A stretch of 64,000 nucleotides of DNA from Penicillus capitatus (Eukaryota > Plantae > Chlorophyta), in assembly GCA_965649825.1 (NCBI GenBank), contig OZ287695.1, positions 806,001-870,000 on the forward strand, read 5' to 3'. The notes below the pieces were generated by a model, which made no database searches, was not told the DNA's origin, and saw nothing but the letters and a program-made list of their open reading frames with translations. The position numbers and the translations under genes are program-made. This document shows, in pieces, positions 7,426-62,055 of the stretch; position 1 is the first letter of the stretch, and every line of letters begins with the position of its first letter.

Positions 7426-9940
7426 ATGGGTAAGACAGAAGTGCGTCGAATAATGCTGCGAATACTCGTGTTGGCACTCGTGCTTCATTCACACTCGTCT
7501 CTTGCTAAAAGTAAGCGCTGACAAATCCGGTTGTCCACGCATCTTAACGGTTGGACGCGAGGCAAACGGACACGCGTGTGTTTAGAGACGAAGAGCAAGA
7601 AGAAAGAGTTTATAAAAACAGAAGCCAAAATCAGTGTAAGACACGCCTGTACGTTGTCGACTGGCATTTCACGAATCGCAGGGAGGTGACGAGGCAGAGA
7701 AAGGCCGGTTTCCGTATGCGTGCAGATTGCGGGACCCTGAAAAGGAAGCGGATTTTTGCAGTGGCATTTTGATTCATCCGCTTTGGGTCGTCTCCGCGGC
7801 GCACTGTTTTGAGGAATCAAGACAACCACATCTCAAGGATGATGCAACAGTTCACTGCGGGATTCACAGTATCAAAGACATCAAATCTGAAAATGTGTGA
7901 CAACGGTTCTTTGCTGCTACTAGTGTCGAGACAGTGTCTGTGCCTAGACGTTCAGCATCGTGGATATAAGGATCTATGAAGGTTGGGACGGTGACTATTG
8001 GAACGGTGGCGATATCGTCATGATCAAGCTCGACAGAGAAGCAGAGTTGAGTTTGCCGAAATGGAATGACGATCCTGATAGTCTTGGACAAGGACTCGAA
8101 CTCATCGCCCTCGGTTGGGGGAAAAGGGGCAAATCGGCAGCTCCGCATACACTGCACATGACAAAGACAGTAGATTACGTAGCATTCAAACAATGCTCGA
8201 AGATATGGGACCAATCGTCCAAAGGAGATCCAAGACAGTTGCCTCTTGGAGTGCTTTGCGCTGGCGATGGTAGCTCAGATACGTGCAAAGGTCTGACCCA
8301 TGCCGCTACCAACTTATGATTTGTCGATCTGCCGACATAGGCGATTCTGGCGGTCCACTGATCTTGGCAAACAAACAAGGAGGCGAGATCAAGGATGGAG
8401 AAGCTTCTTTAGACGTCATCTATGGACTGACATCGTTTGGGCAAGAAAAATGCGGAGAGGAAACTGTGCCGAGCATGTACACCGACTTCGTTCCGTATGC
8501 GGAGTAGAAAGACGCATGTTATCAATTGAAGCGGATATCAGATTGTTGTTTCCTTCCAGGTGGATTCGAAACGTCACGGAAGGGCTCCCTACAAGGGAAA
8601 TCGATTTCTCTCCTGGCGAGACGGGCAGGAAGGAAAAACCGCCTTTAACTAACTCACCGTCTTCAGAAACTAAAGAAAGTACTCTGAATCATCGAAGTAC
8701 TCTTTTTAGCCTTATTTCCGCGTTGAAACAGCAAAGGGCGTTGAAGGGCCATGTCTGATCGAATTGCCGCAAAATCAAGCAGATCTCCCAAAGGTGTGTT
8801 CGTTCGCACGCAGCAGAAGAATGCAGAAGTGACTGACTCCCTTGTTGTAGGCAATGGTGGATGTTCTGAGAAAAGACGACGTTGCCTGTGCTCAGGCTAT
8901 CTTGGACGCGGGACTGGATCCAAATACGAAGTACAACTCTGCCAGCTTCAAGGATGCTGAACTGGACGATCCCTTGCTGCACTGGGCAGCGCGGTTCAAC
9001 GCCGCCAAATGCGCCGAGGTGTGACATTGTCATTTCAATGAGACGTCATGTCACACAACTGAGTTTCCTGTTTTCTAGCTGCTGTTGGAGAATGGAAGCG
9101 AAATCGAAGCGGTCAACCAGTGGTTTGAAACGGCGATGTTCTACTGTGCGAAATACGGAGGACCCGAAGTGACACAAGTAAGGCATTCGAGATGGCCTCG
9201 CCTCGCGTCGTCTCCAGCATTCAATTCGATATGAGCGTATAAAGTGGATTGATTCTCTGAAGTTCTCGTTTCCCTGAAGAGCCTTCGGGAACCGTCTTCC
9301 TCACCTTCATCTCCATTGTGTTCAGGTGCTGGTCGACAACGACGCCTTCGTGTCCGCGCGAGACGCGTGGGGAGAAAGCCCATTGATCGAAGCTTCTTGG
9401 AATGGAGAGTTGGAGATTGTCAAGGTAAGACTCGAACGTCCTGTTCTGCAGAAGACAGAGCAGTCATCAGCAGAAAAGCAACACTTTTCTTTTTTCAAAG
9501 ATCCTGCTCGATAACGGAGCCGAAGTGAGTCCGACAGACACATGGTTGGATACGCCTCTGCACGAAGCGGCATGGCAAGGACATGCAGAAATCGCAAAAG
9601 TACGTCTCTGACGGCAGCGATAGTGATGTTCATTGATATCTGATGCGCATCTTTTGTTGTCTTAGGAACTTCTCGACTACGAGGCCGACATCGACGCTGT
9701 CGACGCCACAGGAGAAACGCCTTTGTTCAACGCGTGCGTCAATGGGCATTTGGACGTCGTGGAGGTATGACGCTGGTTCTTCGGCTTTGCAATTGAAACG
9801 TTCTTCAGTTGCTGGTCGCAGCGGGAGCCGACAAAACGATAGCCAACAACAAAGACGAACTGCCATTCACCGTGGCCTGCACGTTACTCAGCTGCTCGCC
9901 GACAAAGAAATCAGAGATTCAGCGACTCGTTTCGCCGTGA
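7426..9940 (+). CDS. Secreted trypsin-like (S1A) serine protease-ankyrin repeat fusion, gene A (13 exons)
   Basis: Signal peptide MGKTEVRRIMLRILVLALVLHSHSSLA; activation site EAK|ISGG; triad motifs VSAAHC, GDIVMIKL and DTCKGDSGGP (Asp189). Four 99-nt ankyrin exons (9079-9177, 9326-9424, 9501-9599, 9666-9764) plus N- and C-cap exons. All introns are GT-AG and in frame to TGA at 9938-9940. Confidence 0.92.
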
Positions 9941-11168
9941 GCGTGCTCTTAGCTTTCTTACCGCAATCTGAGTCGCTAGTCCTATTCATTCCCGTCGCAC
10001 TCAAACGTCCATACTTCCACACGATTCTTCTCTCTAAGGCTACTTTTGTTTTTGTATTTTGTTAAGTAATCAACAGACATTGGAGAACCTACTGCTCTAA
10101 GATGGGCGCGAGATCCTAGCATTGATGGTTCATGAAGGAATCCAGACTTGTGCCTTTGCGCCACAACTGAGTGCTTTGTACTAAGTCTGCGTGTTTCTTC
10201 TGAGCTGAATCATGTTTACATTGCGTCAAATTGTTTACTCATTCCCCAAACAATGGCATTTATCTCTTTCCGTCTTGAAGGATGATCGTTGTTAAGAGAG
10301 TTTCGCGACGGGCAGACACCAAAGACTTACCCCTTATGGACGACGTACCTAACCACTCCTGCCCCTTCGAGAGAACGCTCTGTGCCATGCCTCCGTATCG
10401 CGCATCGAAGTCGTTCGACATACGACCCCTATGAACGGTTTACCGCCTCTTCCCTCCATGACCCTTAACACGACGACAAGGACCCTTCCTTCCCAGAGAA
10501 GCTTGTTGCTTACCTCAGTGCGATGCGTATCGAAGAAAAAGCAAAGAGATGCTACGAAGACTACGCATCTATCGCCGGCGGCGGTAGATGGTGCTTCAGT
10601 TGCTCGCTTGACGGGTCGAGCACCCAGGCAGAGTCACTGTGTGGATGCCATTTCAGTATTGCTCAGCAGACTGCTCGGTTCATGTCCAGTCTTACCCAGC
10701 TTGAAGATGGCAACCGCTGAAAAACCGTTCAGGCACTACAGACAAACGTGGACCTCTCGTTGTTAAGCTTCTATCTTCAGGGACCATTCAGGATGCAAGG
10801 CTGCTCATCGGTCCAAAGATGGGCGGTTGTGTCCGTTCATGAGCTGACAAGACAGGTGACCGAGCCACCAGCCCGCGCCAACCTTTAAAATCTGCTGAGC
10901 TTCCAAATTGGCTTCCACAGCAGAAACCCCCGCCCATGCCTCAGATTCTGCTTCTGAAGACTGCTCTCCGTTCGACCTGATACAGAAAAGCCATTCTTAC
11001 TTACCATCGCGTTGCGGTTTTCTGGTTGTGGATCTTTCTAGATGTCTGACGTCAACAGACGTGACGTTCCAGTCGTTTACGTTATTTAAACCTCAAACGA
11101 CGGCGCGCTCAAACACCTCCGTTGATTTTTGTTCGCCTGCATTTCAGAGAACAACCGTTGTTAGCAAA

Positions 11169-15991: not shown

Positions 15992-17239
15992 CTACACCGT
16001 TGCGATAACCGCCGCTGGACGCTCTTGCCTTTCTTTGAGTATGCGAACGATCTTGCTGTAAATTTTTTCTGGGGCATTAATCCCCCAAATCATATCCGCG
16101 TGTGTGTATTCCAGCTCCAGAAAATTATCGACAAGGATACCAGGAGCAAGGGCCTCTGTCAAATGCAGTACATCTGACATATCAGACAGCGCGTCATGCC
16201 CTCCGGAAAACAACACCAATGGCACTTCAATCTTGCTCAGATCGTATTTTGGCGGTCTACGCGTTTTATACATGTTCTGATTGCACGGATGGCTTCTGAG
16301 GTGCATCCAGCTCCAACACTTCGTACCGTAATCAAACATCTGGAAGCTTTTGTCATTAAAATTGCGCACACCCTGCGCCCAGTGCGCCATCAACTTCACG
16401 CTGGCTCCAGCCGGAACGTAGGTTAAGTAGGTGTCCCATTTTGCAGGATTGATGTTCTCTGGATTGTACCTGCCGAATAACACAGATGAGATATCTGCGC
16501 ACATCGAAGAAGTGCCTCTGCAAAACGGTCCCAAGATCTTGTGCACGTTATCCTGAGTGGGCAGGAATTGATGGTAGCCGAGGGCGGCCACCAAGTCGTC
16601 TGTACCGAACAAAGCCAGTGCCCTCATGAAGTGACTCGTGATGTGCTTCACATAAGCGACCGGCGACATCATAAAGGCAATGGAGACACGTCGAGCGATT
16701 GGGTGTCTCGTGGAAAAGAGAGCATGACCGATGGCCGTCCCTTGGGAGTGGCCAACATACGCCAAGGTTGGAACTCCCGTCACATCAAGGACATGCTGCA
16801 GCAACGCCGGGAGGTCGTACTTGACCAGCTCATCCATGGAGTAGTTCCAAAACTCGTCGTGGTCCATGTTCGTCTGGAGAGACATATCGCTGAACGTGTT
16901 TCCCCTCGAGTTTCCCAACCAGACGTCGAATCCGGCGTCCGCGAGAATGAAGGCCAGACTGCCGGATGCCCCATTCATGAGGAAGGCGGCGCTGGTGTCG
17001 AGGAGACCGTGTTGGAGATAGACGACAGATCGTTTCGTGTTCGGAAAGGCGTCGGCATTGTAGAGACCGTGCGGTATGCGATAGAGACCGAGGTTGTAGC
17101 CATCGGCCGTGCGAACGACGTATCTCTCGAACGGATAGCCCTCGGGCAAGACAAGATCTTCGAGAAGTGGACGACTGTCTGCCTTGGAGACCAGGGCGAC
17201 AAATGAGAAGCCCAAAAGAATAAAGGCAGAAAGTGCCAT
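15992..17239 (-). CDS. Secreted/lysosomal-type triacylglycerol lipase (gastric/acid lipase family, alpha/beta hydrolase), intronless
   Basis: Signal peptide MALSAFILLGFSFVALVSKA; family motifs VYLQHGLL, GFDVWLGNSRGN and YDLPA; nucleophile GHSQG; catalytic Asp (GHDALSD) and His (YTHADMIWG). Confidence 0.95.
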   Translation of the reverse strand: MALSAFILLGFSFVALVSKADSRPLLEDLVLPEGYPFERYVVRTADGYNLGLYRIPHGLYNADAFPNTKRSVVYLQHGLLDTSAAFLMNGASGSLAFILADAGFDVWLGNSRGNTFSDMSLQTNMDHDEFWNYSMDELVKYDLPALLQHVLDVTGVPTLAYVGHSQGTAIGHALFSTRHPIARRVSIAFMMSPVAYVKHITSHFMRALALFGTDDLVAALGYHQFLPTQDNVHKILGPFCRGTSSMCADISSVLFGRYNPENINPAKWDTYLTYVPAGASVKLMAHWAQGVRNFNDKSFQMFDYGTKCWSWMHLRSHPCNQNMYKTRRPPKYDLSKIEVPLVLFSGGHDALSDMSDVLHLTEALAPGILVDNFLELEYTHADMIWGINAPEKIYSKIVRILKERQERPAAVIATV

Positions 17240-18810: not shown

Positions 18811-21288
18811 ATGAAACACTCTTTGCTTTTGCATCGCCATCGCCTCTATCTTCTTTCTTTTCTATATCTGCTGCCGTTTCAAGGAGCCGTCAGCAAAACA
18901 ACGCACAGTAAACACTGAGTCAGACGGCATTTGTGGAGTGGGTCGGTTTGCTTAGAGAAAACGAAAACGGCTTCTTACGTTACAACGAAACCTGTTTTCA
19001 TAAACGTCAGTTCGTCCAATTAGCGGGAGAGCGGCTGTGCCGAGTGTCGTCGTCTTGCAGGCAAACGAAGCTCCCAGAGGAAGGTTCCCTTATGTTTGCA
19101 GTCTATCCGTCAGAACAGACGAACTGCACAAATGTGGAGGCGTGCTCATTAAAGAGCAATGGGTTGTTACTGCCGCGCACTGTGTCGATCCAAACCTCCC
19201 CGATTCTCTTGGCCGGAATCCGATCGTCCGATGCGATGTCCACAACCTCGATTCCGACGAAGGCAAAGTGAGTCATGAGTTTGACCTCTCTTTTGCGATC
19301 AGCAGCGGTTCCAGTTTATGAGTGTGGCGGCATCCTTTCTACACGAATCGTGGACGGGAGACCACAAAGACGGTTTTGATATCGCCATGCTCAGGCTGAA
19401 TGAAAAAGCCGACCTGCCGTTGCCGTCCGTGGACGAACAAGGCGGCGATTTTAAATCTGGTCGTCTTTTCACTGGAGTGGGCTGGGGGAAGGACACTGAT
19501 GGAAATCTGCAGAAATCTCTCCAGGTTTCTGATGATATGCTGTACAGGGACCTGGACGACTGTAGACAATACTACATAAATAAAATTTCGTCCCACACCA
19601 TCTGCGCAGGATCCTTGGGCCGGAATGCATGCGATGGTCTGCGTCCTCAGCAATGTGCTCCATTCAAGGCTCTTGATTTTTAAAGGCGATTCTGGTGGCC
19701 CCTTGCTCATTCCAAGCATGCCCAGCGGCAACATTTCGGCTGGAAAACCAGAGAAGGATCTGCTGATTGGCATTGTATCGGCTTCTCCCGAGAACTGCAA
19801 TGACGATGCACCGTCACTTTTCATGAGTATGGGTTATTTTTGGACATGGGTTCAACAGATTACCGAGGGTCGTTCGGTAAGACGTCATTTGCTGTTTCTC
19901 TTCTATGCGGCTTTCTCCGAGTGTAGAACACCGCAGTCCCGTCTTCTATAGACACATCTGTGAATCTTCCTGGCGCAGAGGAATCCGCCGGAAATAAAGA
20001 GGAGAAAGAGCAACAAATTATCGAAAAGAGACGCAAACGATTCGCGCACTTCTCACAGAAGGCTTTATTTTTTGTAACGCAGATAAAGGTGCCGAAACTG
20101 AAGCAATCGTCTCGATCTGTGTAGGAGGCGATCAAAGCTATTACTAAGAACGACACCCTGACATTGAAAGCCGCTCTGATGGAAGGACTGAATCCAAACT
20201 CTACGTTTAATGACGAACCGTCGTCCGGATACCAACTGAACAAAGACTCTACACTGCTACACTGGTCAGCTGCCTTCCATGCACTACAGTCCACAAAGGT
20301 AGGCATTCCTTGATGTCGCAGTTGGATGACTATCTACATACGATTTGGTCCTCATTGTTTCTGCCTCCGATAACTGAGATGTGAAGGTCCTTCTGAAGCA
20401 TAAAGCAGAGGTTGACGCTGTCGACAAGAAGGGTCTAACACCGCTGCACGTGGCAGCGATTAATGGATCTACACATGTGGCAAGGGTGAGAACAACAGAG
20501 CTGAGAAATTGCTCCAGCGTACTGAATCTCAGAACAGGCAACTCAGTTGACTTTAGGTTTTATTAAAATCCAAGGCTGAAGTCGATGCGGCCGATATCTT
20601 CAGAGAGACACCGCTACACAAAACAGCTATGCATGGAAACGTCGCCGTGGCGAAGGTGAAGAAATGATAATTCTGAAAGATGGGCAGATGTATACACATG
20701 AACAGATTCTTATTCTCGAAGGAGCCAACCTCAATGCGTTGGATGCTAACGAATGGAGACCTTTGCACGAAGCTGCTTACCATGGACACGTCGATGTTGC
20801 AGAGGTTCATTCCAAGTATTCTAAACCCGGTCAAAGGAAAAGCCGTTCGGCAGGTTCTCCTCGATAGTGGAATGGATGTCGATGCCGTAGCAGACAAAGG
20901 AAGGGTTGCACTCCATCTGGCGGCGCAAAAAGGGCATGCCAGAATCTTAAAGGTCTTAGGAGGATCATCCTTGCTGTCTGCTTTTCGCGTGATTGCGCCG
21001 TTTCAGTTCCTGATTGATCGCGGAGCTGAAATTGACGTCTCTGACGAACAAAGGAACACGCCACTTCACATCGCGGCAATGTTTGGACGGTCAAAAGCGG
21101 CAAAGGTATGCGTCAGATTAGAATTCTCGTGCAGCGACGGATGCACAATGAAGGTTCTCGTGGACGCTGGATCCTCCATTGCTTTCCGCAATGTAGACCG
21201 CAAAAAACCTGCAGAACTCATCTGCATCCACGACGACGGTTGCACGAGAGAAGTTCGAAATGCGCTCTTAGATCTTTTGCTTCCGTAA
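18811..21288 (+). CDS. Secreted S1A serine protease-ankyrin repeat fusion, gene C (13 exons)
   Basis: Signal-like N-terminus MKHSLLLHRHRLYLLSFLYLLPFQGAVS; motifs VTAAHC, FDIAMLRL and NACDG|DSGGP (Asn189). Five 99-nt ankyrin exons (20387-20485, 20557-20655, 20706-20804, 20854-20952, 21007-21105). The C-cap ends LLLP-TAA. Confidence 0.9.
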
Positions 21289-22289
21289 GCGATAACCCAA
21301 TGATCGTTTCTTTCGTTATCGACGACCTCTGGTCAAGAATTGTTTCTTATTCAACGCAAATGTTTGCTATCAGTATTGGTATAGCTAGATACGGATCATG
21401 AGTCGCGCGTGAGTCTCTACAAAAATGCACAAACGATTGCACTTCTGTATTTGCACGTCATTAGGGAGGGCGCACGTAGAAGGGAAGTTTCTGCTCGAAA
21501 AAATGTATAAGGAGATGGTGTAATGCTGTTAGTTTGCCTTCCATGCAATGGCAAATGAGTTGACGACAAGGTCCAGTAGTGGTACTGGAGACAACGTTGC
21601 CTGCTTGAGACATCGATTACCAATACAGACCTAGCTTTGGTGCGATGATTACCCGATTCCCCAGACTGCGCCTTAGGTCCCACCTCCGTCACGTCAGCCG
21701 ACGATTACGTTCTGGTTGTTACACTAGACGACCGAATCCGAATGCTGTCGAGCGGACAATGTAGGAAAGATGCGTAACACTGTGACGTTTCCTGCACGAG
21801 CCAATCCGATGCTGTGGCATCCACGATGCAACACCATTCTAATGAATCCGGATGAGACCTCTTTGTCCGATGCAACTATTCTGACATAGAGTTGAGCGAT
21901 CTTTGTAATCGACCCAGAAGAGTGTACGACATACATCTCAAGTCCTTATGACATGGAGTGTATCCATAGCCATCCTTCACGCAAAGATGATGAGACTCTT
22001 CCATTGATAGCATCCAAAAGGCACAATGTGCCTTTGCGATAAAAGCCACTGGGCCTTACAAGATTCACACGATGTACACTTCAACTATCCGTCGTTATGT
22101 CGTCGCACGGACAAGAGCGCAAGCGACGCAGAAAAACTCGGTCGAAGTCGCATGTCAGTTAAAAGAATCCCATGAGGCGCGTATTCTATTAGAACTGTAC
22201 GCACGTATTGTCAGTCGACATAGGTTTTCGGCTCTTGTCTGACGTATTAAGATTCGACGATGTGCGGTCAACGCGGACGCACCGTCGTC

Positions 22290-22320
22290 GATGGTTATAC
22301 CTTTGATCTTAATAACCATC
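22290..22320. promoter_or_regulatory. 9-bp inverted repeat GATGGTTAT-N13-ATAACCATC upstream of gene B
   Basis: Arms identical to 7318-7348; the spacer differs at one base. Confidence 0.4.
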
Positions 22321-22397
22321 TATCTACCCAGAAAGAATAGTCATTGAGCTCTTCGATTTCCAGGCGGCAATTGACATTGGCGTAATCGGAGACGGAG

Positions 22398-24932
22398 ATG
22401 GGTGGGACAGAAGTGCGTCGAATAATGCTGCGAATACTCGTGCTGGCACTCGTGCTTCATTCGCACTCGTCTCTTGCTAAAAGTAAGCGCTGACAAATCC
22501 GGTTGTCCACGCATCTTAACGGTTAGACGCGAGGCAAACGGACACGCGTGTGTTTAGAGACGAAGAGCAAGAAGAAAGAGTTTATAAAAACAGAAGCCAA
22601 AATCAGTGTAAGACACGCCTATACGTAGTCGACTGTCATTTCATGAATCGCAGGAAGGTGACGAGACGAAGGAAGACCGCTTTCCGTATGCGTGCAGATT
22701 GCGGGACCCTGAAAAGGAAGCGGATTTTTGCAGTGGCATTTTGATTCATCCGCTTTGGGTCGTCTCCGCGGCGCACTGTTTTGAGGAATCGAGACAACCA
22801 CATCTCAAGGATGATGCAACAGTTCATTGCGGGATTCACAGTATCAAAGACATCAAATCTGAAAATGTGTGACAACGGTTCTTTGCTGCTACTAGTGTCG
22901 AGACAGTGTCTGTGCCTAGACGTTCAGCATCGTGGATATAAGGATCTATGAAGGTTGGGACGGTGACTATTGGAACGGTGGCGATATCGTCATGATCAAG
23001 CTCGACAGAGAAGCAGAGTTGAGTTTTCCAAAATGGAATGACGATCCTGATAGTCTTGAACAAGGACTCGAACTCATCGCCCTCGGTTGGGGGAAAAGGG
23101 GCAAATCGGCAGCTCCGCATACACTGCACATGACAAAGACATTAGATTACGTATCATTCAAACAATGCTCGAAGATATGGGACCAATCGTCCAAAGGAGA
23201 TCCAAGACAGTTGCCTCTCGGTGTGCTTTGCGCTGGAGATGGTACCTCAGATACCTGCAAAGGTCTGATCCATGCCGCTACCAACTTATGATTTGTCGAT
23301 CTGACGACATAGGCGATTCTATGATTGGTCGATCTGACGACATAGGCGATTCTGGCGGTCCACTGATCTTGGCAAACAAACAAGGAGGCGAGATCAAGGA
23401 TGGAGAAGCTTCTTTAGACGTCATCTATGGACTGACATCGTTTGGGCAAGAAAAATGCGGAAAGAAAAGAGTGCCGAGCATGTACACCGACTTCGTTCAG
23501 TATGCGGAGTAGAAAGCCAGATGAAATCGAAGTCCATGTCAGAATGACGTTCCCTTTCAGGTGGATACGGAACGTCACGGAAGGGCTCCCTACAAGGGAA
23601 ATCGATTTCTCTCCTGGCGAGACGGGCGGGAAGGAAAAACCGCCCTTGACTAACTCACCGTCTTCAGAAACTAAAGAAAGTACTCTGAATCATCGAAGTA
23701 CTCTTTTTAGCCTTATTTCCGCGTTGACGCAGCAAAGGGCGTTCAAAAACCATGTCTGATCAAATTGCCGCAGAACCAAACAGATCTCCCAAAGGTGTGC
23801 TCGTTCGCACGCAGCAGAAGAATGCAGAAGCGGACTGGTCAACGTAGGCAATGGTGGATGTCCTGAGAAAAGACGACGTTGCCTGTGCTCAGGCTATCCT
23901 GGACGCAGGACTGGATTCGAATACGAAGTACAACTCTGCCAGCTTCAAAGATGCTGAACTGGACGATCCCTTGCTGCACTGGGCTGCGCGGTTCAACGCC
24001 GCCGAATGCGCCGAGGTGTGACATTGTCATTTCACTGACACGCTTCATGTCACACAACTGAGTTTTCTGTTTTCTAGCTGCTGTTGGAGAATGGAAGCGA
24101 AATCGAAGCGGTCAACCAGTGGTTTGAAACGGCGATGTTCTACTGTGCGAAATACGGAGGACCCGAAGTGACACAGGTAAGACATTCGAACTGAAGTCGC
24201 CTCGCCTCCCCTCCAGCATTCAATTCGATACGAGCGTACTTAACGACATTTCTGGACTTCTCGTTTCCCTGAAGAGCCTTCGGGAACCGTCTTCCTCACC
24301 TTCATCTCCATTGTGTTCAGGTGCTGGTCGACAACGACGCCTTCGTGTCCGCGCGAGACGCGTGGGGAGAAAGCCCATTGATCGAAGCTTCTTGGAATGG
24401 AGAGTTGGAGATTGTCAAGGTAAGACTCGAACGTCCTGTTCTGCAGAAGACAGAGCAGTCATCAGCAGAAAGGCAACACTTTTCTGTTTTCAAAGATCCT
24501 GCTCGATAACGGGGCCGAAGTGAGTCCGACAGACACATGGTTGGATACGCCTCTGCACGGAGCGGCATGGCAAGGACATGCAGAAATCGCAAAAGTACGT
24601 TTCTGGCAGCGATAGTAATGTTCATCGATATCTGATGCACATCTTTTGTTGTCTCAGGAACTTCTCGACTACGAGGCCGACATCGACGCTGTCGACGCCA
24701 CAGGAGAAACGCCTTTGTTCAACGCGTGCGTCAATGGGCATTTGGACGTCGTGGAGGTATGACGCTGGTTCTTCGGCTTTGCAATTGAAACGTTCTTCAG
24801 GTGCTGGTCGCAGCGGGAGCCGACAAAACGATAGCCAACAACAAAGGCGAGCTGCCATTCGACGTGGTATGCACGTTGTCGAACTGTTTGTCAAAGACAG
24901 AATCCGACATTAAGCGACTAGTGGCTCCATGA
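22398..24932 (+). CDS. Secreted trypsin-like protease-ankyrin repeat fusion, gene B (recent duplicate of gene A)
   Basis: Same 13-exon structure as A with an intact frame to TGA at 24930-24932. Activation site EAK|ISEG; triad present; four 99-nt ankyrin exons. Confidence 0.9.
23288..23353 (+). repeat. 33-nt tandem duplication spanning the 3' splice site and the GDS codons of gene B
   Basis: ATGATTTGTCGATCTGACGACATAGGCGATTCT followed by ATGATTGGTCGATCTGACGACATAGGCGATTCT; gene A has a single copy. Confidence 0.95.
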
Positions 24933-36200: not shown

Positions 36201-36944
36201 CGGCGGCGTGCCTCTCAACTCTGCCTTCCCTCCGGAGGTATTGATCAGCAGCAGGACGCAGTTCTCATGTCCGTACTCCTTCTGCACAATCCGTACCTTC
36301 TCCCGTGCCAGTTCCAGTCCTGTCTGTCCCTCACGACTGCCATCATGCACAATCACGAAGAGCTTCCCGCAGTGATCTTCGCTCACAGGGGCCATCTGTT
36401 CCTGCAGCATGAGGGTGGGGATGTTGGCACTGTCGGTCAGATCTTCAAAAGCTTTGATGGAATCGACTTCGGCCGAAGAAATGGCGTAGATGCATCCCAG
36501 CGGATGATCGTACGTTTCGTTGGCATCGAAGCAGAGCAGTCTCAGAAAATCCTGCCTGTATTTCAGAAACCAGGGCGTCGATGTGAGAGGCCTCGTCTCC
36601 GACAATCGATGAGGGGCCTCTTTGATCGTCTCTTCCGATATCTTCTGGACAGTGTTCTTGAGATGGGCATCGATGATTTCGGCCGTCGGTTGCTCCATTG
36701 TATGGCCATAGCTAAAACGCATACGCGCCTCCGTTACCCGCATGGACTGTCCAGAGACGCGCAGCGGTGCATTGACATCGGTCTGTTCGCTAAAAGGACG
36801 GAGCAGGTCGACAAAACTCAGGCCATTCTTTTCTCGGCAGACGGATTCGACGCTCTCACTCGCGACCACCATCACCAGCGGGGTGAAGCGTTCGCGGACC
36901 CAGGCGCGTAGACTCGTGTGCGTTGGACCAAACGAATACGACAT
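33258..36944 (-). CDS. TRAPPC8: Trafficking protein particle complex subunit 8 (Trs85), ~1228 aa, apparently intronless
   Basis: N-terminus FTPLVMV..E..C.KNGLSFVDLLRPF, FD..ETYDHPLGC, the E.QMRQLGD..F.L..YE motif and RKFAFHMTLAG..F are characteristic of TRAPPC8/Trs85. One long ORF. Confidence 0.93.
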   Translation of the reverse strand: MSYSFGPTHTSLRAWVRERFTPLVMVVASESVESVCREKNGLSFVDLLRPFSEQTDVNAPLRVSGQSMRVTEARMRFSYGHTMEQPTAEIIDAHLKNTVQKISEETIKEAPHRLSETRPLTSTPWFLKYRQDFLRLLCFDANETYDHPLGCIYAISSAEVDSIKAFEDLTDSANIPTLMLQEQMAPVSEDHCGKLFVIVHDGSREGQTGLELAREKVRIVQKEYGHENCVLLLINTSGGKAELRGTPPIAFDDLRPSAVPGGGAGEHDSDTERPKDGWGSFLSKADLERINDLIRNYMTRCFFPKLDIRIGYLRAAVASKRRGFAMKFMERTSTLLKTSLSTIGRDHHGTIGFKYYSDEAQMRQLGDILFLLGRYEDALEVYSSISVSKEACPTFYAGLQFMMGLGTAVLVGYSDPSVYFNRAYDSYVRVRGKTTRMFATRTALIHAAYCLTEGYIPQAIQTLLKGYESDEMLRGALLLEEASGLLLRTEPPSLRKFAFHMTLAGVRFYNCLFHKLSLRCYNLILDIYTNKSWMAIEQHVASMMLKFHREQGNHADAFAWTINMLTTQHALSPEIQKEYIEWICSYIKEAPQHEVSSIAEFSLPILHMETMDVQFDGEIVNGTAMAEEMDSALWTDLESRFRDPLSASNTTGLVLTNSGAPDEPSGWVVCGEAVRFSCEFENPLQTPIHVTSAQLLFEFERTDDSCSPTSSPVSVPEQSFSLKESERSTLELQLIPNTPGRLRIIGVSWFLNGRIPGHKLFGKASWQGKDRLPFRARTHYPTLLFVALDPVARFRLASAPVPHQVWKGQLWTGSWVFENIGKISIRNVQITCSCSDLIFTTPVKTGSNEELFEKRGVYYVECDVSKDMRLNLCFNPQTAGRIAVHTVIRYESLQPETLLRARFLRHSFVVDVDEVLRFASWLLPSEMSRTFVLAMELENRSADVLFDVTAIEAAPNRYRVHSAGQIKKDRPMKLLPGQKMMQHALVTETDAEATPLLPNGTVSADRQCSSTSEEDEIHSASRRAATDDDLGISLRWQAAEPSKEGTSEEGSAHDSRFGCLRSIHDVTALSAKVDLHVDQRRMVQTMHDGTPVSFPISIRLCNLSRKTLSVLFRAGDDWIGDESGSWKQNVKEDKEEEHEQQAGLMPMASWSWSGQTESHIAQLSPGETVDVQTEILCFFSGSFCVTNYSCKWKSLENPMLSGIIPGKPLYLTVIEAGPSKEGSVVAKS

Positions 36945-37083
36945 TTCTGCACAGCACAGTAAGGTCACACGAGACGTTGGCTCTCACACCGTCGGGGGTA
37001 TACTGTATGATGATGACGCTCCGTTGACGGCCGGCCCCCTCGTGGTTGGCAGATTCACGACGCGGTGGCGAACGAAGACGTGT

Positions 37084-54790: not shown

Positions 54791-54935
54791 CTTCCATCGA
54801 CGTGCTCAAAGCCCGACCGGTCGGACAACAACATCAGCCCAAGAACTCGTTCTACTTTGACAACGTATGCTCTGCAATGTGTCGTGTGGTGTATACTGAT
54901 GCAGTGTGCATCATTCGCAGAAGGATAGTAATCTC

Positions 54936-57502: not shown

Positions 57503-57662
57503 TAATAGCCCGTGGTCATAAGACTGTGTACGGTTCTGTAAAACACATACTGACCATTGCAAAGCACCTATCGTCGGCCACTCGATGGAGTTGAGAGGGG
57601 GAGCGTACAAACGATGTCATCAATAAAGGAGAGTCCGTCGCCGTTTGAGGCACACATGTGGG

Positions 57663-58390: not shown

Positions 58391-58840
58391 GTTCTGCTTC
58401 TTCGGAACGAGTGAAATGACTTCTGCATTCTCATGATGGGATGTTCATAGGAGAACTAGGCGGTTGATATTGCGACAGAAACGAAAGAAAGTGCCTCCAG
58501 CGGATAGAGCAAACATCGGGTAGTGGATATTCTTACCTAGGCTCCTAACGTGGTAAGTGCGAATGCGCTATCACAAGTTTGTTTCGCGCTAGTTGTGGCG
58601 ACAGCGAGTCGAAAACACAAGGCGTTCGTGATTAATCAACGTTCTGAATTGGACGCAACAGTCTTAGTGACGTCTCTAGTTCTTTTTGGCGTGTAAAAAA
58701 CCAGTCGCCTGGTTTTCCATTCGATGCAAATGACAAACAAGAATTCGTCAGATCATCGAAGAATCGTGAAAAAAAAAACTACTCAAAGTTAGGCGTTTTT
58801 ATAGATGGAATGTGTAGCGGTGGGGTCTTGTTGGTATTCC

Positions 58841-61800
58841 TCATGGACGCAGGAGTTTCTCCAGATAGGTTTTAGTCGAGTGCGGACATTCAAAAAAAGT
58901 TTCAGTGCAAATAACATCGAAAGGCGTTTCTCCGTTATCGTTGGTTGCCGTCTTCGAGGCTCCGGCATCTACCAGAACCTGAAAATACGCTATTAAACTA
59001 TAAGATGCTATATCTGACTCGCCTCTGCTGCTTCGTCCTCTCCGTCTTTTGCTGCATTATGAAGCGGAGTGTCTCCGTCCGTATCTTCCCTATCGAGAGA
59101 GGCATCTTCTTCAACTAACAACTGCAGCAGGCCAAGTGAAATAAAAAACCGTACCAAATGTGGGCGATCCACCTTCACAACCTCAGGATTCCCTCCTACC
59201 GCGGCGAGATGAAGTGGCGTCTGTCCTAGGTGTGTCTCGTCGCTAACCTTCGCTCCGTTGTCGAGGAGGATCTGGCAGTCGACAGTTTTTGTCAACGAGC
59301 TAAGAACGTAGATGCGCAACTGACCTCGACCATCTCGGTGTCTGCGTAACGTGCTGCCAAATGCAGAGGAGTCCATCCATCGTCCTTGGCCTGGCTAGCG
59401 TCCGCTCCGTACTCGAGGAGGACCTGGCACTCGACAGTTTTGTCAATGAGCCAACGACGTCGATGCGCGACTGACCTCGACTATCTCGGTGTCTGCGTAA
59501 CGGACTGCCAAATGCAGAGGAGTCCATTCTTCGTGACAGACCTGGTTGACGTCAGCTCCGTACTCGAGGAGGACCTGACAGTCGACAGTTTTGTCGATGA
59601 GCTAACGACGTAGATGCGCGACTGACCTCGACTATCTCGGTGTCTGCGTTATAACGTGTTGCCAAATGCAGAGGGGTCCATCCATCGTCATCATGGTTGG
59701 CGTCAGCTCCGTTCTCGAGGAGGACCTGGCAGTCGACAGTTTCTGTCAATGATGTATCGACGTAGTACGTCACCGACCTCGACCACTTCAGCATCTGCGT
59801 AACGTGCTGCTATATGCAGAGTACTCCATCCATCGTCCTTGGCCTGGCTAGCGTCCGCTCCGTACTCGAGGAGGACCTGGCACTCGACAGTTTTGTCAAT
59901 GAGCCAACGACGTAGATGCTCAACTGACCTCGACCATCTCGGCGTCTGCGTAACGGACTGCCACATCCAGAGGAGTCCATTGACTTTCAGTGGCCGCGTC
60001 GATATTAGCTCCTTCTCCCAGAAGCATCTGCACATAACACAATAATTAGCGAACAGACGCCAAAAAGTATACTACCTTCACGATATTGGGATATCCGTAC
60101 TCGGAAGCCACATGCAAAGCTGTCCGTCCGGTTTTAGAAACGGCCTCGATATCTGCTTTGTAATCGAGAAGAATCTGTGAATCACATAAGATGCAGGAGA
60201 TTAAAATGTGCTATTAGATGCAGACTTCAAATATCTCAGAGTGTCCGTAGCGTGCTGCGTAATGCAATGGAGTCCATCCATCGACGTCAGTGGCGTTCAC
60301 TGCAGCGTCTTCCTCAAGAAGAATCTGTGAATGGACATTTGAGCGGATGATTTGGATCATATTGAAATTACCTTTGTCACTCTTGCGTGTCCGAATTCTG
60401 CTGCCACATGCAAAGGGGTCACTTTATAAGTACCGTTGTCTTTGTTGTCCACGCCTGCTTCGTACGACAGAAGAACCTTCATTTACGCAAAGCACTCGTG
60501 CTTGATTGAAAAATGAGTTGTCCTCTATCTGTTATCCAGAGTCGATGCTGAATGCTTTACCTTAGTGCATTCTGACGCATTGTAATACGCCGACCAGTGC
60601 AACAGAGTAAATGGTTCCCCTGGCGGATAACCTGACATTTGAGATGCATTGTAGAAAGAATCTGGATACACTCCAATCAAAAGTGCGGCCTCCAAAGTCA
60701 GGACAGTGTCATTTCTTATAGCGTCAATTGCTTCCTATGAGACCATTTGCATATGTACAATGAGATTTGATTCATCATCGATGTTACATTCAGCAGTTCT
60801 GTATCGGAGAATTCCTTCAGCCGTTCGCACTCTTCATCAAGTTCCTGTTGTTCCAACTTCTCTTTCAGTTTACCATCTGCAGGTTCATCTACCTTTGGAA
60901 ATGGTGGAACACTTGGCGAAGGTTCTTCTGATGGTTCTGGCACCTGCACAAAGCGATCAGGACAGAAGAAGAGATTTGGAGAACAGTTTACTTCTGGACC
61001 TTCACCAATTGTTTCCTGAATCCAATCCCAGAATGCGCCAATGCTGGTGTAAATACTTGGTGCAGGGTCATGGCAATCATCAAACCCCATAGAGGTTATG
61101 CCGACAATCATATCAAGTTCTGGATCCCCAGCCTTTATCTTCTTCGAGTTATGGGGGATCAATAGTGGACCACCAGAATCACCTTCCACACGGAAGACTA
61201 ATCAGAAAGCGGTACTCTCGTATTCCAAACCTTTGCATGTGTTAGACTCCTCCAATCCAACACAAATCGAGTGATTCTTGACCGAGTTTTCGAGGAACTC
61301 TATGCAGTCGTGTTCATTCACATACTGTAGCTTGCTCGTCATCTGTAAAATATTTGGACGATTTCCACTTCCATCGTCTCCCCAACCCAGAGCGGTGAAC
61401 AATGTGCCCTCTGGAAATTCTCCTTCCTGTTGGCTAAACAATGGCTCTATGAGATTCGCTTCTTTGTTCAGTTTGACGACGGCGATGTCGTAACCATCGT
61501 TCACGTCACCGTTCCAAGACTCGGGCCAGTGGCTTTGTACTCCGCTGAGTACCTAGCAACATCCATTTCGGGAACAAAGTGAATAAACGTGAACAGTTCA
61601 CTTCGCCGCTGTCGTTTGCGTCAAGAGTGTGAATACCACAGCGGATAAGCGGATGTCTGCCGAGACTTTGCGAAGAGGCTGAGTCGACGCAGTGCGCTGC
61701 AGTGATGACCCACTGCTGTCGAAAAAGCACTCCGCCGCAGCGGTGGAGTCCATCTTCTCGTGCCGAGAGACTACACATATAAGGGAACCGTCCCCTAGGC

Positions 61801-62055
61801 GCATCTACGCCATCCTACAAGATACAATGGTCACGACGCAGCGAAAGGAACGTGCGAGATTACGACAATGTAGGGCCCTTTTCCCCCTTTGGAGCTTGGC
61901 TCTCTTGTTTTATCTAAACAATCACCCGTGTCGGAGTGACAACCGACAGAAGACTCACTCTGGACTTGAGGACTGGCGTCGGCATAGAAGTGCAGCAGGG
62001 ATGCTAACAGGAGCAGAACTGCGATGGCTCTTTTTGGCAACGAGGGAAACGACAT
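58841..62055 (-). CDS. Secreted S1A serine protease-ankyrin repeat fusion, gene D (17 exons, 10 internal ankyrin exons)
   Basis: Signal peptide MSFPSLPKRAIAVLLLLASLLHFYADA; activation site GPY|IVDG; motifs ITAAHC, YDIAVVKL and NTCKG|DSGGP (Asn189). Ankyrin exons 60476-60372 (105 nt) and nine of 99 nt from 60324-60226 to 59121-59023. The last intron is GC-AG; the C-cap exon is 58978-58841. Confidence 0.92.
59272..60027 (-). repeat. Five-unit tandem repeat with 151-nt period (52-nt intron + 99-nt ankyrin exon) inside gene D
   Basis: The exon/donor junction sequence recurs at 59321, 59472, 59623, 59774 and 59925. The introns are mutually homologous (GTCAGT..ACAAAACTGTCGA(C/G)TG(C/T)CAG). Confidence 0.97.

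What the first reader, a model, noticed from the sequence alone, without database searches (positions are those of the whole stretch)
7426..62055. A family of secreted trypsin-fold proteases fused to variable ankyrin arrays (candidate programmable protease system)
Seen: four genes (7426-9940, 18811-21288, 22398-24932, 62055-58841) encode signal peptide + propeptide + complete S1A protease (His/Asp/Ser and the six canonical Cys) + Pro/Glu-rich linker + capped ankyrin array with 4, 5, 4 and 10 internal repeats. Repeat surfaces differ strongly between A/B, C and D. Established: S1A zymogens are secretory, whereas ankyrin repeats are overwhelmingly cytosolic or nuclear binding scaffolds, with rare secreted exceptions such as latrotoxins and bacterial effectors. 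Inference: the array acts as an exchangeable substrate-recognition module aiming an extracellular protease, i.e. an immune-like or wound-response repertoire. I know of no characterised protein with this architecture, but I could not search.
Basis: partly seen in the sequence, partly recalled or inferred. Interest (0 to 1): 0.88.

Follow-up and report, generated by a model that had tools for sequence, protein, structure and literature searches.

The report
Secreted trypsin-like proteases with ankyrin tails
Four genes of a giant single-celled (siphonous) green seaweed encode trypsin-type proteases, apparently sent into the secretory pathway, each tethered to an ankyrin-repeat binding array of different length; they belong to an undescribed, fast-duplicating family found across this algal order, and its role (wound response, defence or feeding) is unknown.

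Summary
Four intron-rich genes splice into uninterrupted ORFs of 577, 609, 577 and 793 aa. Each has a hydrophobic signal-like N-terminus, a complete S1A protease, a linker of about 50 residues, and a capped ankyrin array with 4, 5, 4 and 10 internal repeats. Every internal repeat is one phase-0 exon.

The window comes from a bryopsidalean green alga closer to Caulerpa than to Bryopsis. The architecture is not unique. At least 30 database proteins share it, from Bryopsis, Ostreobium, Caulerpa and assembled transcripts, all unnamed. I found no paper that mentions the fusion; only a Peptidase S1 expansion in Ostreobium has been reported.

The family turns over quickly:
- a gene-sized duplication produced A and C;
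- a chimeric pseudogene sits at the related locus;
- gene D contains a 151-bp exon-plus-intron tandem array;
- repeat number runs from 4 to 10 across 12 sampled genes.

A/C and an allelic copy of C are under purifying selection (dN/dS about 0.3). An AF2 model of a homologue shows two independent modules on a disordered tether.

My best reading is a set of secretory-pathway proteases carrying a tethered protein-binding exosite. The "programmable immune or wound repertoire" idea is plausible but untested.

The parts
7426..9940 (+). Gene A: S1A protease-ANK, 577 aa, 11 exons (7426-7510, 7641-7894, 7948-8290, 8341-8503, 8560-8752, 8851-9018, 9079-9177, 9326-9424, 9501-9599, 9666-9764, 9809-9940)
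   Evidence: Spliced model has no internal stop and all introns are GT-AG. Pfam Trypsin 3.4e-33 plus Ank families. His 7802-7804, Asp 8011-8013, Ser 8346-8348; residue 189 is Asp.
7426..7510 (+). Gene A exon 1: signal-peptide-like N-terminus MGKTEVRRIMLRILVLALVLHSHSSLAK
   Evidence: Read directly from the sequence. Charged n-region, hydrophobic core and SLA|K; this is a by-eye judgement, no predictor was run.
7641..8752 (+). Gene A exons 2-5: short pro-region, S1A protease domain (aa 50-290) and linker (aa 291-346)
   Evidence: A phase-1 intron splits CK|GDSGGP at the same position in all four genes.
8851..9940 (+). Gene A ankyrin array: N-cap exon, four 99-nt phase-0 repeat exons, C-cap exon
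18811..21288 (+). Gene B: S1A protease-ANK, 609 aa, 12 exons (18811-18907, 19011-19267, 19303-19636, 19686-19876, 19927-20073, 20125-20298, 20387-20485, 20557-20655, 20706-20804, 20854-20952, 21007-21105, 21154-21288)
   Evidence: Pfam Trypsin 1e-35 plus Ank. His 19178-19180, Asp 19378-19380, Ser 19691-19693; residue 189 is Asn.
20125..21288 (+). Gene B ankyrin array: N-cap, five 99-nt phase-0 repeat exons, C-cap with Cys pair (ELICIHDDGC)
22398..24932 (+). Gene C: recent duplicate of A, 577 aa, 11 exons (22398-22482, 22613-22866, 22920-23262, 23346-23508, 23561-23753, 23848-24015, 24078-24176, 24321-24419, 24496-24594, 24658-24756, 24801-24932)
   Evidence: The duplicated block 22266-24922 matches 7292-9930 at 92.8% nt. 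dN/dS against A is 0.30. The allelic or homeologous copy in L008 keeps all shared exon boundaries, with dN/dS 0.26.
23848..24932 (+). Gene C ankyrin array: N-cap, four repeat exons, C-cap
   Evidence: Only one substitution against A lies in the four internal repeats; the differences cluster in the C-cap tail.
58841..62055 (-). Gene D: S1A protease-ANK, 793 aa, 17 exons (62055-61864, 61814-61602, 61552-61231, 61182-60992, 60943-60788, 60734-60561, 60476-60372, 60324-60226, 60174-60076, 60027-59929, 59876-59778, 59725-59627, 59574-59476, 59423-59325, 59271-59173, 59121-59023, 58978-58841)
   Evidence: Pfam Trypsin 3e-39, Ank 1.4e-91. His 61694-61692, Asp 61489-61487, Ser 61177-61175. Canonical IVDG mature N-terminus after the exon 1/2 junction. 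The last intron is GC-AG.
58841..60734 (-). Gene D ankyrin array: N-cap, ten single-exon repeats (one of 105 nt, nine of 99 nt), C-cap with Cys pair (DVICTETFFEC)
59251..59980 (-). Tandem array inside gene D: unit of 151 bp (99-nt repeat exon plus 52-nt intron), 4.8 copies, covering repeats R4-R8
   Evidence: TRF period 151, 82% matches. The self-BLAST offset of three units is 89% identical. The nearest relatives of R4-R8 are within the same gene.
7292..9930 (+). Gene-sized segmental duplication, partner 22266-24922
   Evidence: blastn gives 92.8% over 2,678 bp. Exons are 95.2% identical and introns 87%.

Best explanation
These are four intact nuclear genes of a siphonous green alga of the order Bryopsidales. 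They belong to a lineage-specific family of modular S1A (chymotrypsin-fold) serine proteases.

Proposed mechanism:
1. The protein enters the ER through an N-terminal signal peptide and leaves the cytosol, to the cell exterior, the wall or an endomembrane lumen.
2. The catalytic unit is an ordinary trypsin-fold domain. A and C have Asp189, which predicts cleavage after Arg/Lys; B and D have Asn189.
3. A disordered linker of about 50 residues tethers the protease to a C-terminal capped ankyrin solenoid whose C-cap carries a conserved Cys pair.
4. The solenoid acts as a protein-binding exosite. It brings the protease to a partner, which could be a substrate, an anchor or a regulator, so that array sequence and length, not the active site alone, decide where the enzyme cuts.
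5. The family diversifies by whole-gene duplication, by unequal crossing-over between neighbouring copies, and by duplication or loss of repeat exons. Each repeat is one 99-nt phase-0 exon, so these changes never break the reading frame.

Shown here: the gene structures, the domains, the catalytic residues, the family distribution, the duplication history, purifying selection on A/C, and independent folding of the two modules in a homologue.

Inferred: secretion, enzymatic activity, the binding role of the array, and any physiological role.
For: Gene models and domains.

S1A membership: the profile hits plasma kallikrein, chymotrypsin and elastase at about 1e-40. The AF2 model of homologue P0002 superposes on chymotrypsin(ogen) with target TM-scores of 0.81-0.87 and on ANK domains and DARPins with up to 0.89.

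One transcript: P0002 and P0001 are uninterrupted protease-plus-ANK ORFs on 2.0- and 2.6-kb contigs. The true start of P0002 adds MTNKLLPALFLILLLGPS and is followed by a canonical R|ITGG activation site.

Secretory features across the family: hydrophobic N-termini, a C-cap Cys pair in most listed members, sequons, and PPPP/TP-rich linkers in some.

Tethered modules: AF2 gives pLDDT above 90 for both domains, below 40 for residues 267-321, and pTM 0.50.

Binding-type array: the highest entropy falls at the positions randomised in DARPins (2, 3, 5, 13, 14, 33), and the framework is conserved.

The genes appear functional: dN/dS is 0.30 for A against C and 0.26 for C against its L008 copy.

Turnover:
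- gene-sized A/C duplication;
- a chimera of B's 5' end and a C-like 3' part, decayed to a pseudogene, at the 88%-identical related locus;
- the 151-bp tandem unit in D;
- 4-10 repeats in 12 sampled genes, with 70 of 75 repeats bounded by splice sites.

Family distribution: Bryopsis sp. KO-2023 (at least 18 members), Ostreobium and Caulerpa.
Against: - No signal-peptide predictor, expression data or proteomics exist for the window genes themselves.
- A, B and C lack a canonical Ile16-type activation site, so their activation, or even their activity, is uncertain.
- The binding role of the array rests on analogy with other ANK proteins.
- AF2 gives no interdomain contact, but neither does it exclude one.
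- Within the window the protease and ANK halves diverge in parallel. The array is therefore not obviously the sole specificity determinant.
Confidence: 0.6

Rival explanations
1. The family is a diversified recognition-and-cleavage repertoire, an immune-like or wound-clotting system. Array variation generates new target specificities, and members are deployed after wounding or infection of the giant cell.
For: - The family is large and clustered (at least 18 members in Bryopsis, most on one 7.4-Mb contig; further clusters in L002-L004).
- Repeat number varies from 4 to 10.
- The one-repeat-per-exon structure matches what was proposed to diversify candidate immune receptors in the brown alga Ectocarpus (PMC3341825).
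- Binding-surface against framework dN/dS is 2.84 against 0.40 in D repeats R4, R5, R7 and R8, and 0.88 against 0.45 in a paralogue.
- Bryopsis paralogues have a 92-95% identical protease but arrays whose nearest relatives are other genes.
- Neighbours elsewhere in these genomes include VWA/C-type-lectin genes and an EF-hand NADPH-oxidase gene.
Against: - A/C and the allelic copy of C show purifying selection on the array (0.25-0.26).
- The dN/dS excess in D rests on about 35 synonymous sites and on non-independent pairs. R5 and R8 have identical surfaces, which suggests gene conversion.
- The Bryopsis mosaics could be gene-model chimeras.
- The window neighbours are housekeeping genes.
- There are no expression or functional data.
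Confidence: 0.2
2. These are nutritional or wall-remodelling extracellular peptidases. The ANK array merely anchors the enzyme to a wall or matrix component, or stabilises it. This extends the feeding hypothesis made for the Ostreobium S1 expansion.
For: - Iha et al. report 189 Peptidase S1 genes in Ostreobium, about 40% with signal peptides, and propose external protein degradation.
- ANK-less close relatives exist in the same genomes.
- Some linkers resemble those of wall glycoproteins.
Against: - The family is also present in free-living, non-boring Bryopsis and Caulerpa.
- Bulk digestive enzymes rarely need long, variable binding arrays.
- ANK domains are not known wall-binding modules (my own knowledge).
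Confidence: 0.12
3. The proteins are not exported. They are stored in an endomembrane compartment (vacuole or ER-derived bodies). The ANK array recognises cytosolic targets only when wounding mixes the compartments.
For: - ANK repeats normally bind cytosolic proteins (established knowledge).
- The family has a conserved C-terminal motif, LL.P-COOH in the Halimedineae-type members, which could be a sorting signal.
- Siphonous algae have one huge vacuole and respond to injury by rapid mixing reactions (background in the papers).
Against: - No KDEL/HDEL motif and no known vacuolar signal is present.
- The idea is pure inference, and nothing here tests localisation.
Confidence: 0.1
4. The ANK array is an intramolecular regulator, an inhibitor or folding chaperone of the protease, rather than a targeting module.
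For: A, B and C lack a canonical zymogen activation site, so another control mechanism would be needed.
Against: - AF2 predicts no docked arrangement: pTM 0.50 with a disordered tether.
- Array length varies from 1 to more than 10 repeats across the family, which is hard to reconcile with one fixed inhibitory interface.
Confidence: 0.06
5. Annotation artefact: the protease and ANK parts are separate neighbouring genes, or the copies are pseudogenes.
For: The models are hand-built without RNA data from this species. A decayed copy does exist at the related locus.
Against: - All four genes splice in frame with no stop.
- The ANK N-cap exons lack their own start and upstream signal.
- The same order occurs in more than 30 proteins and in intronless transcript contigs.
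- dN/dS is about 0.3.
Confidence: 0.03

Closest known systems
Unnamed Trypsin+ANK proteins of other Bryopsidales (Bryopsis sp. KO-2023 BSKO_04685-04837 and others; Ostreobium quekettii CAD7703444/CAD7695175, 'Peptidase S1 domain-containing protein'; Caulerpa lentillifera g4201/g8885)
   Same: Same order of parts: signal-like N-terminus, S1A domain with the GRFPY...AAHC...GDSGGP motifs, linker, N-cap, ANK repeats and a Cys-containing C-cap. They are 28-36% identical over 75-92% of gene B.
   Different: They come from different genera. Bryopsis and Ostreobium C-caps have 4-5 Cys rather than 2. Many have a canonical (R/L)|IVGG site that A, B and C lack. Some carry an extra Cys-rich domain before a short array. 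None has been studied. The literature mentions only an S1 expansion in Ostreobium.
Animal modular S1A proteases of clotting, complement and CLIP cascades (plasma kallikrein/factor XI, C1r/C1s/MASP, factor B, arthropod CLIP proteases)
   Same: The catalytic fold is the same, and these are the best PDB sequence matches (about 1e-40). They are secreted zymogens in which non-catalytic protein-binding modules (exosites) set the partner and substrate (established knowledge). This is the closest analogue in how the algal proteins may work.
   Different: The accessory modules are N-terminal and of other kinds (apple, CUB, EGF, CCP, VWA, clip), never ANK. No cascade is known in algae. The algal proteins are not orthologues of any of them.
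[quoted passage not shown] 2012, PMC3341825; also PMC11378527)
   Same: One repeat per exon, intense exon duplication and shuffling, high birth-and-death rates, and variability concentrated in the ligand-binding repeats. These genes were proposed as an algal immune repertoire.
   Different: They are cytosolic signalling proteins (GTPase or NB-ARC) with LRR or TPR repeats, in a brown alga. There is no protease, no signal peptide and a different repeat type. Exon shuffling between genes is not shown for the window genes; only intragenic duplication is.
HtrA/Deg proteases (S1C protease plus C-terminal PDZ domains)
   Same: A PA-clan serine protease with a C-terminal protein-binding module that recruits or gates substrates. 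This is the only trypsin-fold family generally found in plants (my own knowledge).
   Different: They belong to a different subfamily (S1C, oligomeric cage) and use PDZ rather than ANK. The window proteins score with Pfam Trypsin PF00089 and match S1A structures.
Secreted ankyrin-repeat proteins (spider latrotoxins; bacterial ANK effectors)
   Same: They show that ANK arrays can function outside the producer's cytosol. Latrotoxin chains appear among the PDB hits for the array.
   Different: They have no protease domain and an unrelated N-terminal part, and they act on other organisms' cells. Only the repeat fold is shared.
Independent ANK+S1A fusions: gall midge Contarinia nasturtii proteins (P0024, P0029) and a probably bacterial protein (P0030)
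   Same: Signal peptide, ANK array and trypsin domain lie in one polypeptide.
   Different: In the midge the array is N-terminal. The protease domains are ordinary insect or bacterial S1A, not the algal GRFPY clade. These are convergent fusions and are also uncharacterised.

Membership tests
Peptidase family S1A (chymotrypsin fold, PA clan) | Significant match to the Trypsin profile over the whole domain | tested here: met
   PF00089 scores 116-136 bits against a cut-off of 20.6, covering profile positions 1-5 to 220 of 220. The PDB profile search hits kallikrein, chymotrypsin and elastase at about 1e-40.
Peptidase family S1A (chymotrypsin fold, PA clan) | Catalytic triad in the order His-Asp-Ser, with the GDSGGP oxyanion motif and Asp194 | tested here: met
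   These columns are invariant in an alignment of 8 family members. Coordinates are given for all four genes.
Peptidase family S1A (chymotrypsin fold, PA clan) | Conserved disulfide Cys pairs 42-58, 168-182 and 191-220 | tested here: met
   All six Cys align, and there is one extra family-specific pair. Disulfide formation itself is inferred.
Peptidase family S1A (chymotrypsin fold, PA clan) | Zymogen activation that exposes an Ile/Val16 N-terminus | tested here: inconclusive
   D has PY|IVDG, and relatives have R|ITGG or L|IVGG. A/C have HE-SQGG and B has VVLQAN at this position.
Peptidase family S1A (chymotrypsin fold, PA clan) | Proteolytic activity | not testable with these tools
   This needs recombinant enzyme.
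Ankyrin-repeat proteins | Tandem 33-residue repeats with the TPLH/helix-turn-helix signature, above the Pfam thresholds | tested here: met
   Ank, Ank_2, Ank_3, Ank_4 and Ank_5 all score above their cut-offs. Of the 23 internal repeats, 22 have 33 aa and one has 35 aa. The AF2 model of the homologue shows paired helices with pLDDT 93-98, and it superposes on ANK domains and DARPins with target TM-scores up to 0.89.
Ankyrin-repeat proteins | Variable concave binding surface on a conserved framework | tested here: met
   Entropy is highest at DARPin positions 2, 3, 13, 10, 16, 17, 33 and 5, and lowest at positions 23, 28, 8, 11, 15 and 24.
Secreted / secretory-pathway proteins | Cleavable N-terminal signal peptide | tested here: inconclusive
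   All four genes, and most relatives whose N-terminus looks complete, have an N-terminal hydrophobic stretch with n/h/c-like regions. No SignalP-type predictor or experiment was available.
Secreted / secretory-pathway proteins | Features typical of oxidising or glycosylating compartments | tested here: met
   There is a conserved Cys pair in the ANK C-cap of most listed members, 2-7 NxS/T sequons per protein, and Pro-rich extensin-like linkers in some relatives. This is indirect evidence.
Diversified recognition repertoire (as proposed for Ectocarpus ROCO/NB-ARC-TPR, PMC3341825) | Large family with rapid birth and death | tested here: met
   Evidence comes from the A/C duplication, the chimeric pseudogene in L001, eight further genes in L002-L004, and at least 18 members in Bryopsis.
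Diversified recognition repertoire (as proposed for Ectocarpus ROCO/NB-ARC-TPR, PMC3341825) | One repeat per symmetric exon, with exon duplication or shuffling | tested here: met
   70 of 75 repeats in the window and L002-L004 are bounded by splice sites, all in phase 0. D has a 151-bp exon-plus-intron tandem array. Shuffling between genes is suggested only for Bryopsis gene models.
Diversified recognition repertoire (as proposed for Ectocarpus ROCO/NB-ARC-TPR, PMC3341825) | Diversifying selection on ligand-binding positions | tested here: inconclusive
   Surface dN/dS is 2.84 in four D repeats and 0.88 in a paralogue, against 0.40-0.45 for the framework. Whole-array values are 0.25-0.26 for A/C and for C/L008. 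Counts are small, the pairs are not independent, and no site-model test was run.
Diversified recognition repertoire (as proposed for Ectocarpus ROCO/NB-ARC-TPR, PMC3341825) | Response to wounding or pathogens | not testable with these tools
   No expression data are available.

The most novel reading that the evidence does not exclude
Giant single-celled siphonous algae use a diversified set of secreted proteases, each aimed by its own ankyrin array, as an extracellular recognition-and-cleavage system for wound sealing or defence. It would be a clotting/complement-like system evolved independently in green algae. New specificities would arise through duplication, loss, skipping or exchange of single-repeat exons.
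Probability: 0.15. Interest if true: 0.85.

Novelty: new variant of a known kind. Interest (0 to 1): 0.6.

Why it matters
- S1A trypsin-fold proteases are, to my knowledge, essentially absent from land plants. Here they are expanded in an order of algae whose whole body is one cell and must survive wounding.
- A secreted protease carrying an ankyrin array is a combination with no solved structure, and I found no paper on it.
- If the array aims the protease, the family would be a natural counterpart of engineered DARPin-directed enzymes.
- It would also give a concrete set of candidates for the unexplained wound-plug and regeneration biology of Bryopsis, Caulerpa and Halimeda-type algae.
- The one-repeat-per-exon structure gives a second, independent algal example of the exon-based repeat diversification first described in Ectocarpus.
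- Even on the modest reading, the Peptidase S1 expansion reported for Ostreobium should be re-read: part of it consists of ANK fusions shared by the whole order, so it is not simply an adaptation to boring into limestone.

Tried and rejected
- **Automatic splice chaining.** A naive dynamic-programming chainer gave wrong models with 36-46-nt introns and wrong frames. I replaced it with hand curation against the trypsin and ANK consensus.
- **Exact look-up of spliced gene B.** Look-up of the TRAPPC8 ORF from its first ATG found nothing because the recorded gene call starts one residue later.
- **Profile search of 1.84 billion representative proteins.** The full-length alignment was swamped by giant ANK proteins, so it gave no usable census.
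- **Protease-only profile search.** It listed none of the ANK-fused proteins already found with gene B. It showed only ANK-less algal relatives, followed by animal S1A proteases.
- **Intron divergence as a neutral yardstick for repeat exons in D.** This is confounded because the duplication unit is out of register with the exons. I kept only the comparison of surface against framework codons within exons.
- **Other family members and linked genes in the window.** I found no further family member, no VWA/lectin homologue, and only housekeeping or unannotated ORFs.
- **D-like contig L004.** It holds paralogues at 70-75% nt identity, not an orthologue, so no orthologous test of D was possible.
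- **Literature.** Six searches and five papers read yielded no description of the fusion.
- **Species identity.** The source matches ENA assembly ERZ25074695, contig ctg340449, but I could not name the species. The polyploid-like pattern of copies at 100%, 99.6% and 91% identity and the affinity to Caulerpa fit a Halimeda-type alga. That is only a guess.

Full report
**What is in the sequence**

The window is eukaryotic. Long ORFs are scarce, and the trypsin and ankyrin motifs sit in short open segments separated by 35-150-nt introns. I read the four regions in three frames and assembled spliced models by hand.
- A, 7426-9940 (+): 11 exons, 577 aa.
- B, 18811-21288 (+): 12 exons, 609 aa.
- C, 22398-24932 (+): 11 exons, 577 aa.
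- D, 62055-58841 (-): 17 exons, 793 aa.

All introns are GT-AG except the last intron of D, which is GC-AG. GC donors recur in paralogues elsewhere.

Pfam finds Trypsin (E 3e-33 to 3e-39) and the Ank families (down to 1e-91) in A, B and D, the three models I scanned. C is 96%/93% identical to A. tblastn with the four proteins finds no further copy in the window.

**Anatomy**

Each protein has these parts in order:
- a hydrophobic, signal-peptide-like N-terminus (for example MSFPSLPKRAIAVLLLLASLLHFYADA in D);
- a short pro-region;
- a complete S1A domain with His57, Asp102, Asp194 and Ser195, the six canonical Cys and one extra conserved pair;
- a linker of 51-56 residues;
- an ANK array made of a 56-58-residue N-cap exon, then 4, 5, 4 or 10 internal repeats, then a C-cap exon with a Cys pair.

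Residue 189 is Asp in A and C, which predicts trypsin-like specificity, and Asn in B and D.

A phase-1 intron splits C-K/D-|-G-D-S-G-G-P at the same place in all four genes.

Every internal repeat is a single exon: 22 of 99 nt and one of 105 nt. Every intron from the linker onward is phase 0. An independent HMM scan of the six-frame translation recovered 23 of 23 repeats with AG and GT/GC exactly at the repeat boundaries.

Only D has a canonical mature N-terminus (GPY|IVDG). A/C (HE-SQGG) and B do not. Only D's linker is truly Pro/Glu-rich.

**Relations among the four genes**

A and C result from a gene-sized duplication: 7292-9930 matches 22266-24922 at 92.8% nt. Exons are 95% identical and introns 87%. 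Between A and C, dS is 0.11 and dN/dS is 0.30, with 0.25 for the ANK part alone. Their four internal repeats differ by one residue. The differences cluster in the pro-region and in the C-cap tail.

B is closest to D (49% protease, 44% ANK identity). A/C against B is about 30% in both halves. Within the window the protease diverges as fast as the array.

D contains a tandem array of 151-bp units, each a 99-nt exon plus a 52-nt intron, in 4.8 copies at 59251-59980. The youngest event was a three-unit block, 89% identical. The nearest relatives of repeats R4-R8 are inside D itself.

**Whose genome this is**

The single-exon TRAPPC8 homologue at 33258-36947 (-) gave these matches:

| Match | Identity |
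|---|---|
| Gene call on ENA ERZ25074695, contig ctg340449 (792 kb) | 100% |
| Second contig of the same assembly | 99.6% |
| Contigs of ERZ26696514 | 91% |
| Caulerpa lentillifera | 46% |
| Bryopsis sp. KO-2023 | 39% |
| Ostreobium quekettii | 32% |

The source is thus a bryopsidalean alga closer to Caulerpa than to Bryopsis, with several diverged genome copies. A Halimeda-type polyploid would fit (background), but I could not verify the species.

The other window genes are two lipase copies, a MATE transporter, an AAA ATPase, a MutS-like gene, a UBD protein and an LRR protein. Nothing links them functionally to the proteases.

**The family outside the window**

A search with B returned many proteins with the same order of parts, at 28-36% identity over 75-92% of the query:
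- at least 18 'hypothetical proteins' of Bryopsis sp. KO-2023, most with locus tags BSKO_04685-04837 on one 7.4-Mb contig;
- Ostreobium 'Peptidase S1 domain-containing' proteins;
- Caulerpa models g4201 and g8885;
- several metagenome or read-archive contigs.

Shared family features include GRFPY.C, AAHC and GDSGGP. Most members whose N-terminus looks complete have a hydrophobic N-terminus, and many have a canonical (R/L)|I-V/T-G-G activation site. The N-cap carries an LLHW motif. The C-cap always contains Cys: two in the window-like group and four or five in Bryopsis and Ostreobium. HMM-detected repeat numbers run from 1 to 10 or more.

P0002 and P0001 are uninterrupted 562- and 757-aa ORFs on 2.0- and 2.6-kb contigs. 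The P0002 contig ends in sequencing adapter. Its ORF extends 18 codons upstream to MTNKLLPALFLILLLGPS, a textbook signal peptide, and is followed by AAR|ITGG. These are most simply transcripts.

A protease-only profile finds ANK-less relatives in the same algae and then animal S1A enzymes. The best solved relatives are plasma kallikrein, chymotrypsin, elastase and factor XIa, at about 1e-40.

Convergent ANK-trypsin fusions exist in the gall midge Contarinia nasturtii, where the array is N-terminal, and in a probably bacterial protein.

**Turnover**

- *Related locus L001.* It is 88% identical over 12.4 kb across the TRAPPC8-AAA block. It has a single copy between TRAPPC8 and the lipase, where the window has B and C. 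That copy has B's signal-peptide exon and an A/C-like body. It has decayed: SVARC replaces SAAHC, the GDSGG exon is gone, and only the N-cap, one repeat and the C-cap remain. This is what unequal crossing-over between neighbours followed by decay would leave.
- *Locus L008.* The 96.4%-identical second copy of the window region keeps the same eight 3' exons of C, with the same boundaries. dS is 0.039 and dN/dS is 0.26.
- *Loci L002-L004.* Three further loci of these assemblies hold eight more family genes with at least 4 to 8 splice-bounded repeats. Of their repeats, 47 of 52 are bounded by splice sites at the repeat boundary.

**Are the arrays diversifying?**

Positional entropy across the window repeats peaks at the positions that form the ANK binding surface (DARPin positions 2, 3, 5, 13, 14, 33). 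The framework is conserved. This is expected of any binding-competent ANK protein.

Among D's recently duplicated repeats (R4, R5, R7, R8), surface codons give dN/dS 2.84 and framework codons 0.40. In six repeats of a D-like paralogue the values are 0.88 and 0.45. This is suggestive only, for three reasons: there are about 35 synonymous sites, the pairs are not independent, and R5 and R8 have identical surfaces but diverged frameworks, which points to gene conversion.

In Bryopsis, P0003 and P0004 share a 95%-identical protease, but their C-terminal 100 residues are each closest to a different paralogue. P0025 combines a P0016-like protease (92%) with a P0035-like array (72-79%). That fits array exchange between paralogues. 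It rests on automatic gene models in tandem clusters, so it needs curation.

**Structure**

Mean pLDDT was 80.7, with values above 90 through most of the protease core and 93-98 through the array. Residues 267-321 scored below 40, and pTM was 0.50.

The model therefore shows two well-folded modules joined by a disordered tether, with no confident docking. Each PDB match covers only one module: chymotrypsin(ogen) with target TM-scores of 0.81-0.87, and ANK domains or DARPins up to 0.89. No chain matches both modules.

**Mechanism, and what is shown against inferred**

Shown:
- intact genes;
- S1A and ANK membership;
- conserved catalytic residues;
- a family-wide signal-like N-terminus and C-cap Cys;
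- a single transcript in relatives;
- purifying selection;
- independent modules in the homologue model;
- a gene structure that lets repeats be gained or lost in frame.

Inferred:
- the proteins leave the cytosol;
- they are active;
- the array is a tethered exosite that brings the protease to a partner.

This works like the exosite modules of animal clotting and complement proteases, or the PDZ domains of HtrA. It is not a member of those families.

The stronger idea, a diversified immune- or wound-type repertoire, parallels the one-repeat-per-exon LRR/TPR genes of Ectocarpus (PMC3341825). It is compatible with the data but untested.

Alternatives are wall or nutritional peptidases with an anchoring array (following Iha et al.), storage in an endomembrane compartment with action after wounding, or an autoregulatory array. 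They are ranked in the rival list.

**Novelty**

The proteins are visible in public databases but unnamed. Six full-text searches and five papers read turned up no description of a trypsin-ankyrin fusion in algae. The Ostreobium genome paper reports only the Peptidase S1 count.

I rate this a new variant of a known kind: a modular secreted S1A protease with an accessory module never seen in that role. It is of real but still hypothetical biological interest.

Noticed in passing
window 23263-23345 (intron 3 of gene C): A 33-nt tandem duplication repeats the 3' splice site together with the first 8 nt of the GDSGG exon. Use of the upstream AG would insert 11 residues (GDSMIGRSDDI) in frame, just before the catalytic-serine motif. 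Gene A lacks this duplication.
   Followed up: partly
window 5329-5791 (+) and 16736-17192 (-): An inverted 463-bp duplicate, 96% identical, of the 5' part of an alpha/beta-hydrolase lipase gene (Pfam Abhydro_lipase). Lipase sequence therefore lies upstream of both gene A and gene B.
   Followed up: partly
L001 15328-17100 (ENA ERZ26696514 ctg303811; related locus, 88% identical in the TRAPPC8-AAA block): A single decayed family copy lies where the window has genes B and C. It has a B-like signal-peptide exon and an A/C-like body. His57 is replaced (SVARC), the GDSGG exon is missing, and only the N-cap, one repeat and the C-cap remain. It looks like an unequal-crossover product that became a pseudogene.
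   Followed up: yes
L002 2500-15500 (same 1.67-Mb contig, about 90 kb from L001): A two-gene cassette occurs twice: a Trypsin-ANK gene next to a gene with VWA and C-type-lectin domains. The two VWA genes are 71% identical. No homologue of the VWA gene is in the window.
   Followed up: partly
L003 16000-20687 (ENA ERZ25074695 ctg340412): A Trypsin-ANK gene sits beside an EF-hand gene and an NADPH-oxidase-type gene (FAD_binding_8/NAD_binding_6). Together these would resemble a respiratory-burst oxidase. This is adjacency only.
   Followed up: no
window 58979-59022 (last intron of gene D); L003 and L004 repeat exons: This intron is GC-AG, with donor GCGAGT. GC donors recur at several ANK-exon boundaries in paralogues, so they seem unusually common in this gene family.
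   Followed up: partly
window 33258-36947 (-): The TRAPPC8/Trs85 homologue is a single 3.7-kb exon, in contrast to the 11-17-exon protease genes nearby. It served as the taxonomic marker: 100%, 99.6% and 91% copies in ENA assemblies, 46% to Caulerpa.
   Followed up: yes
proteins P0024, P0029 (Contarinia nasturtii) and P0030 (ENA contig, probably bacterial): Independent fusions of a signal peptide, an ANK array and a trypsin domain. In the gall midge the array is N-terminal. All are unnamed or misnamed in the databases.
   Followed up: no
proteins P0093, P0101, P0113, P0116-P0118 (read-archive contigs): A sub-family has an extra Cys-rich domain (C.CS.DG.S....TG..GC...) between the protease and a very short ANK array in which the repeat HMM detects a single repeat.
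   Followed up: no
L004 8985-9085: One repeat of a D-like paralogue is split between two reading frames. This is either a frameshift (decaying copy) or an assembly error in a 16x-coverage contig.
   Followed up: no
window 62766-63962 (-): A 398-aa ORF made of RNI-type leucine-rich repeats (Pfam LRR_6) lies immediately upstream of gene D. I did not examine its relation to D, if any.
   Followed up: no
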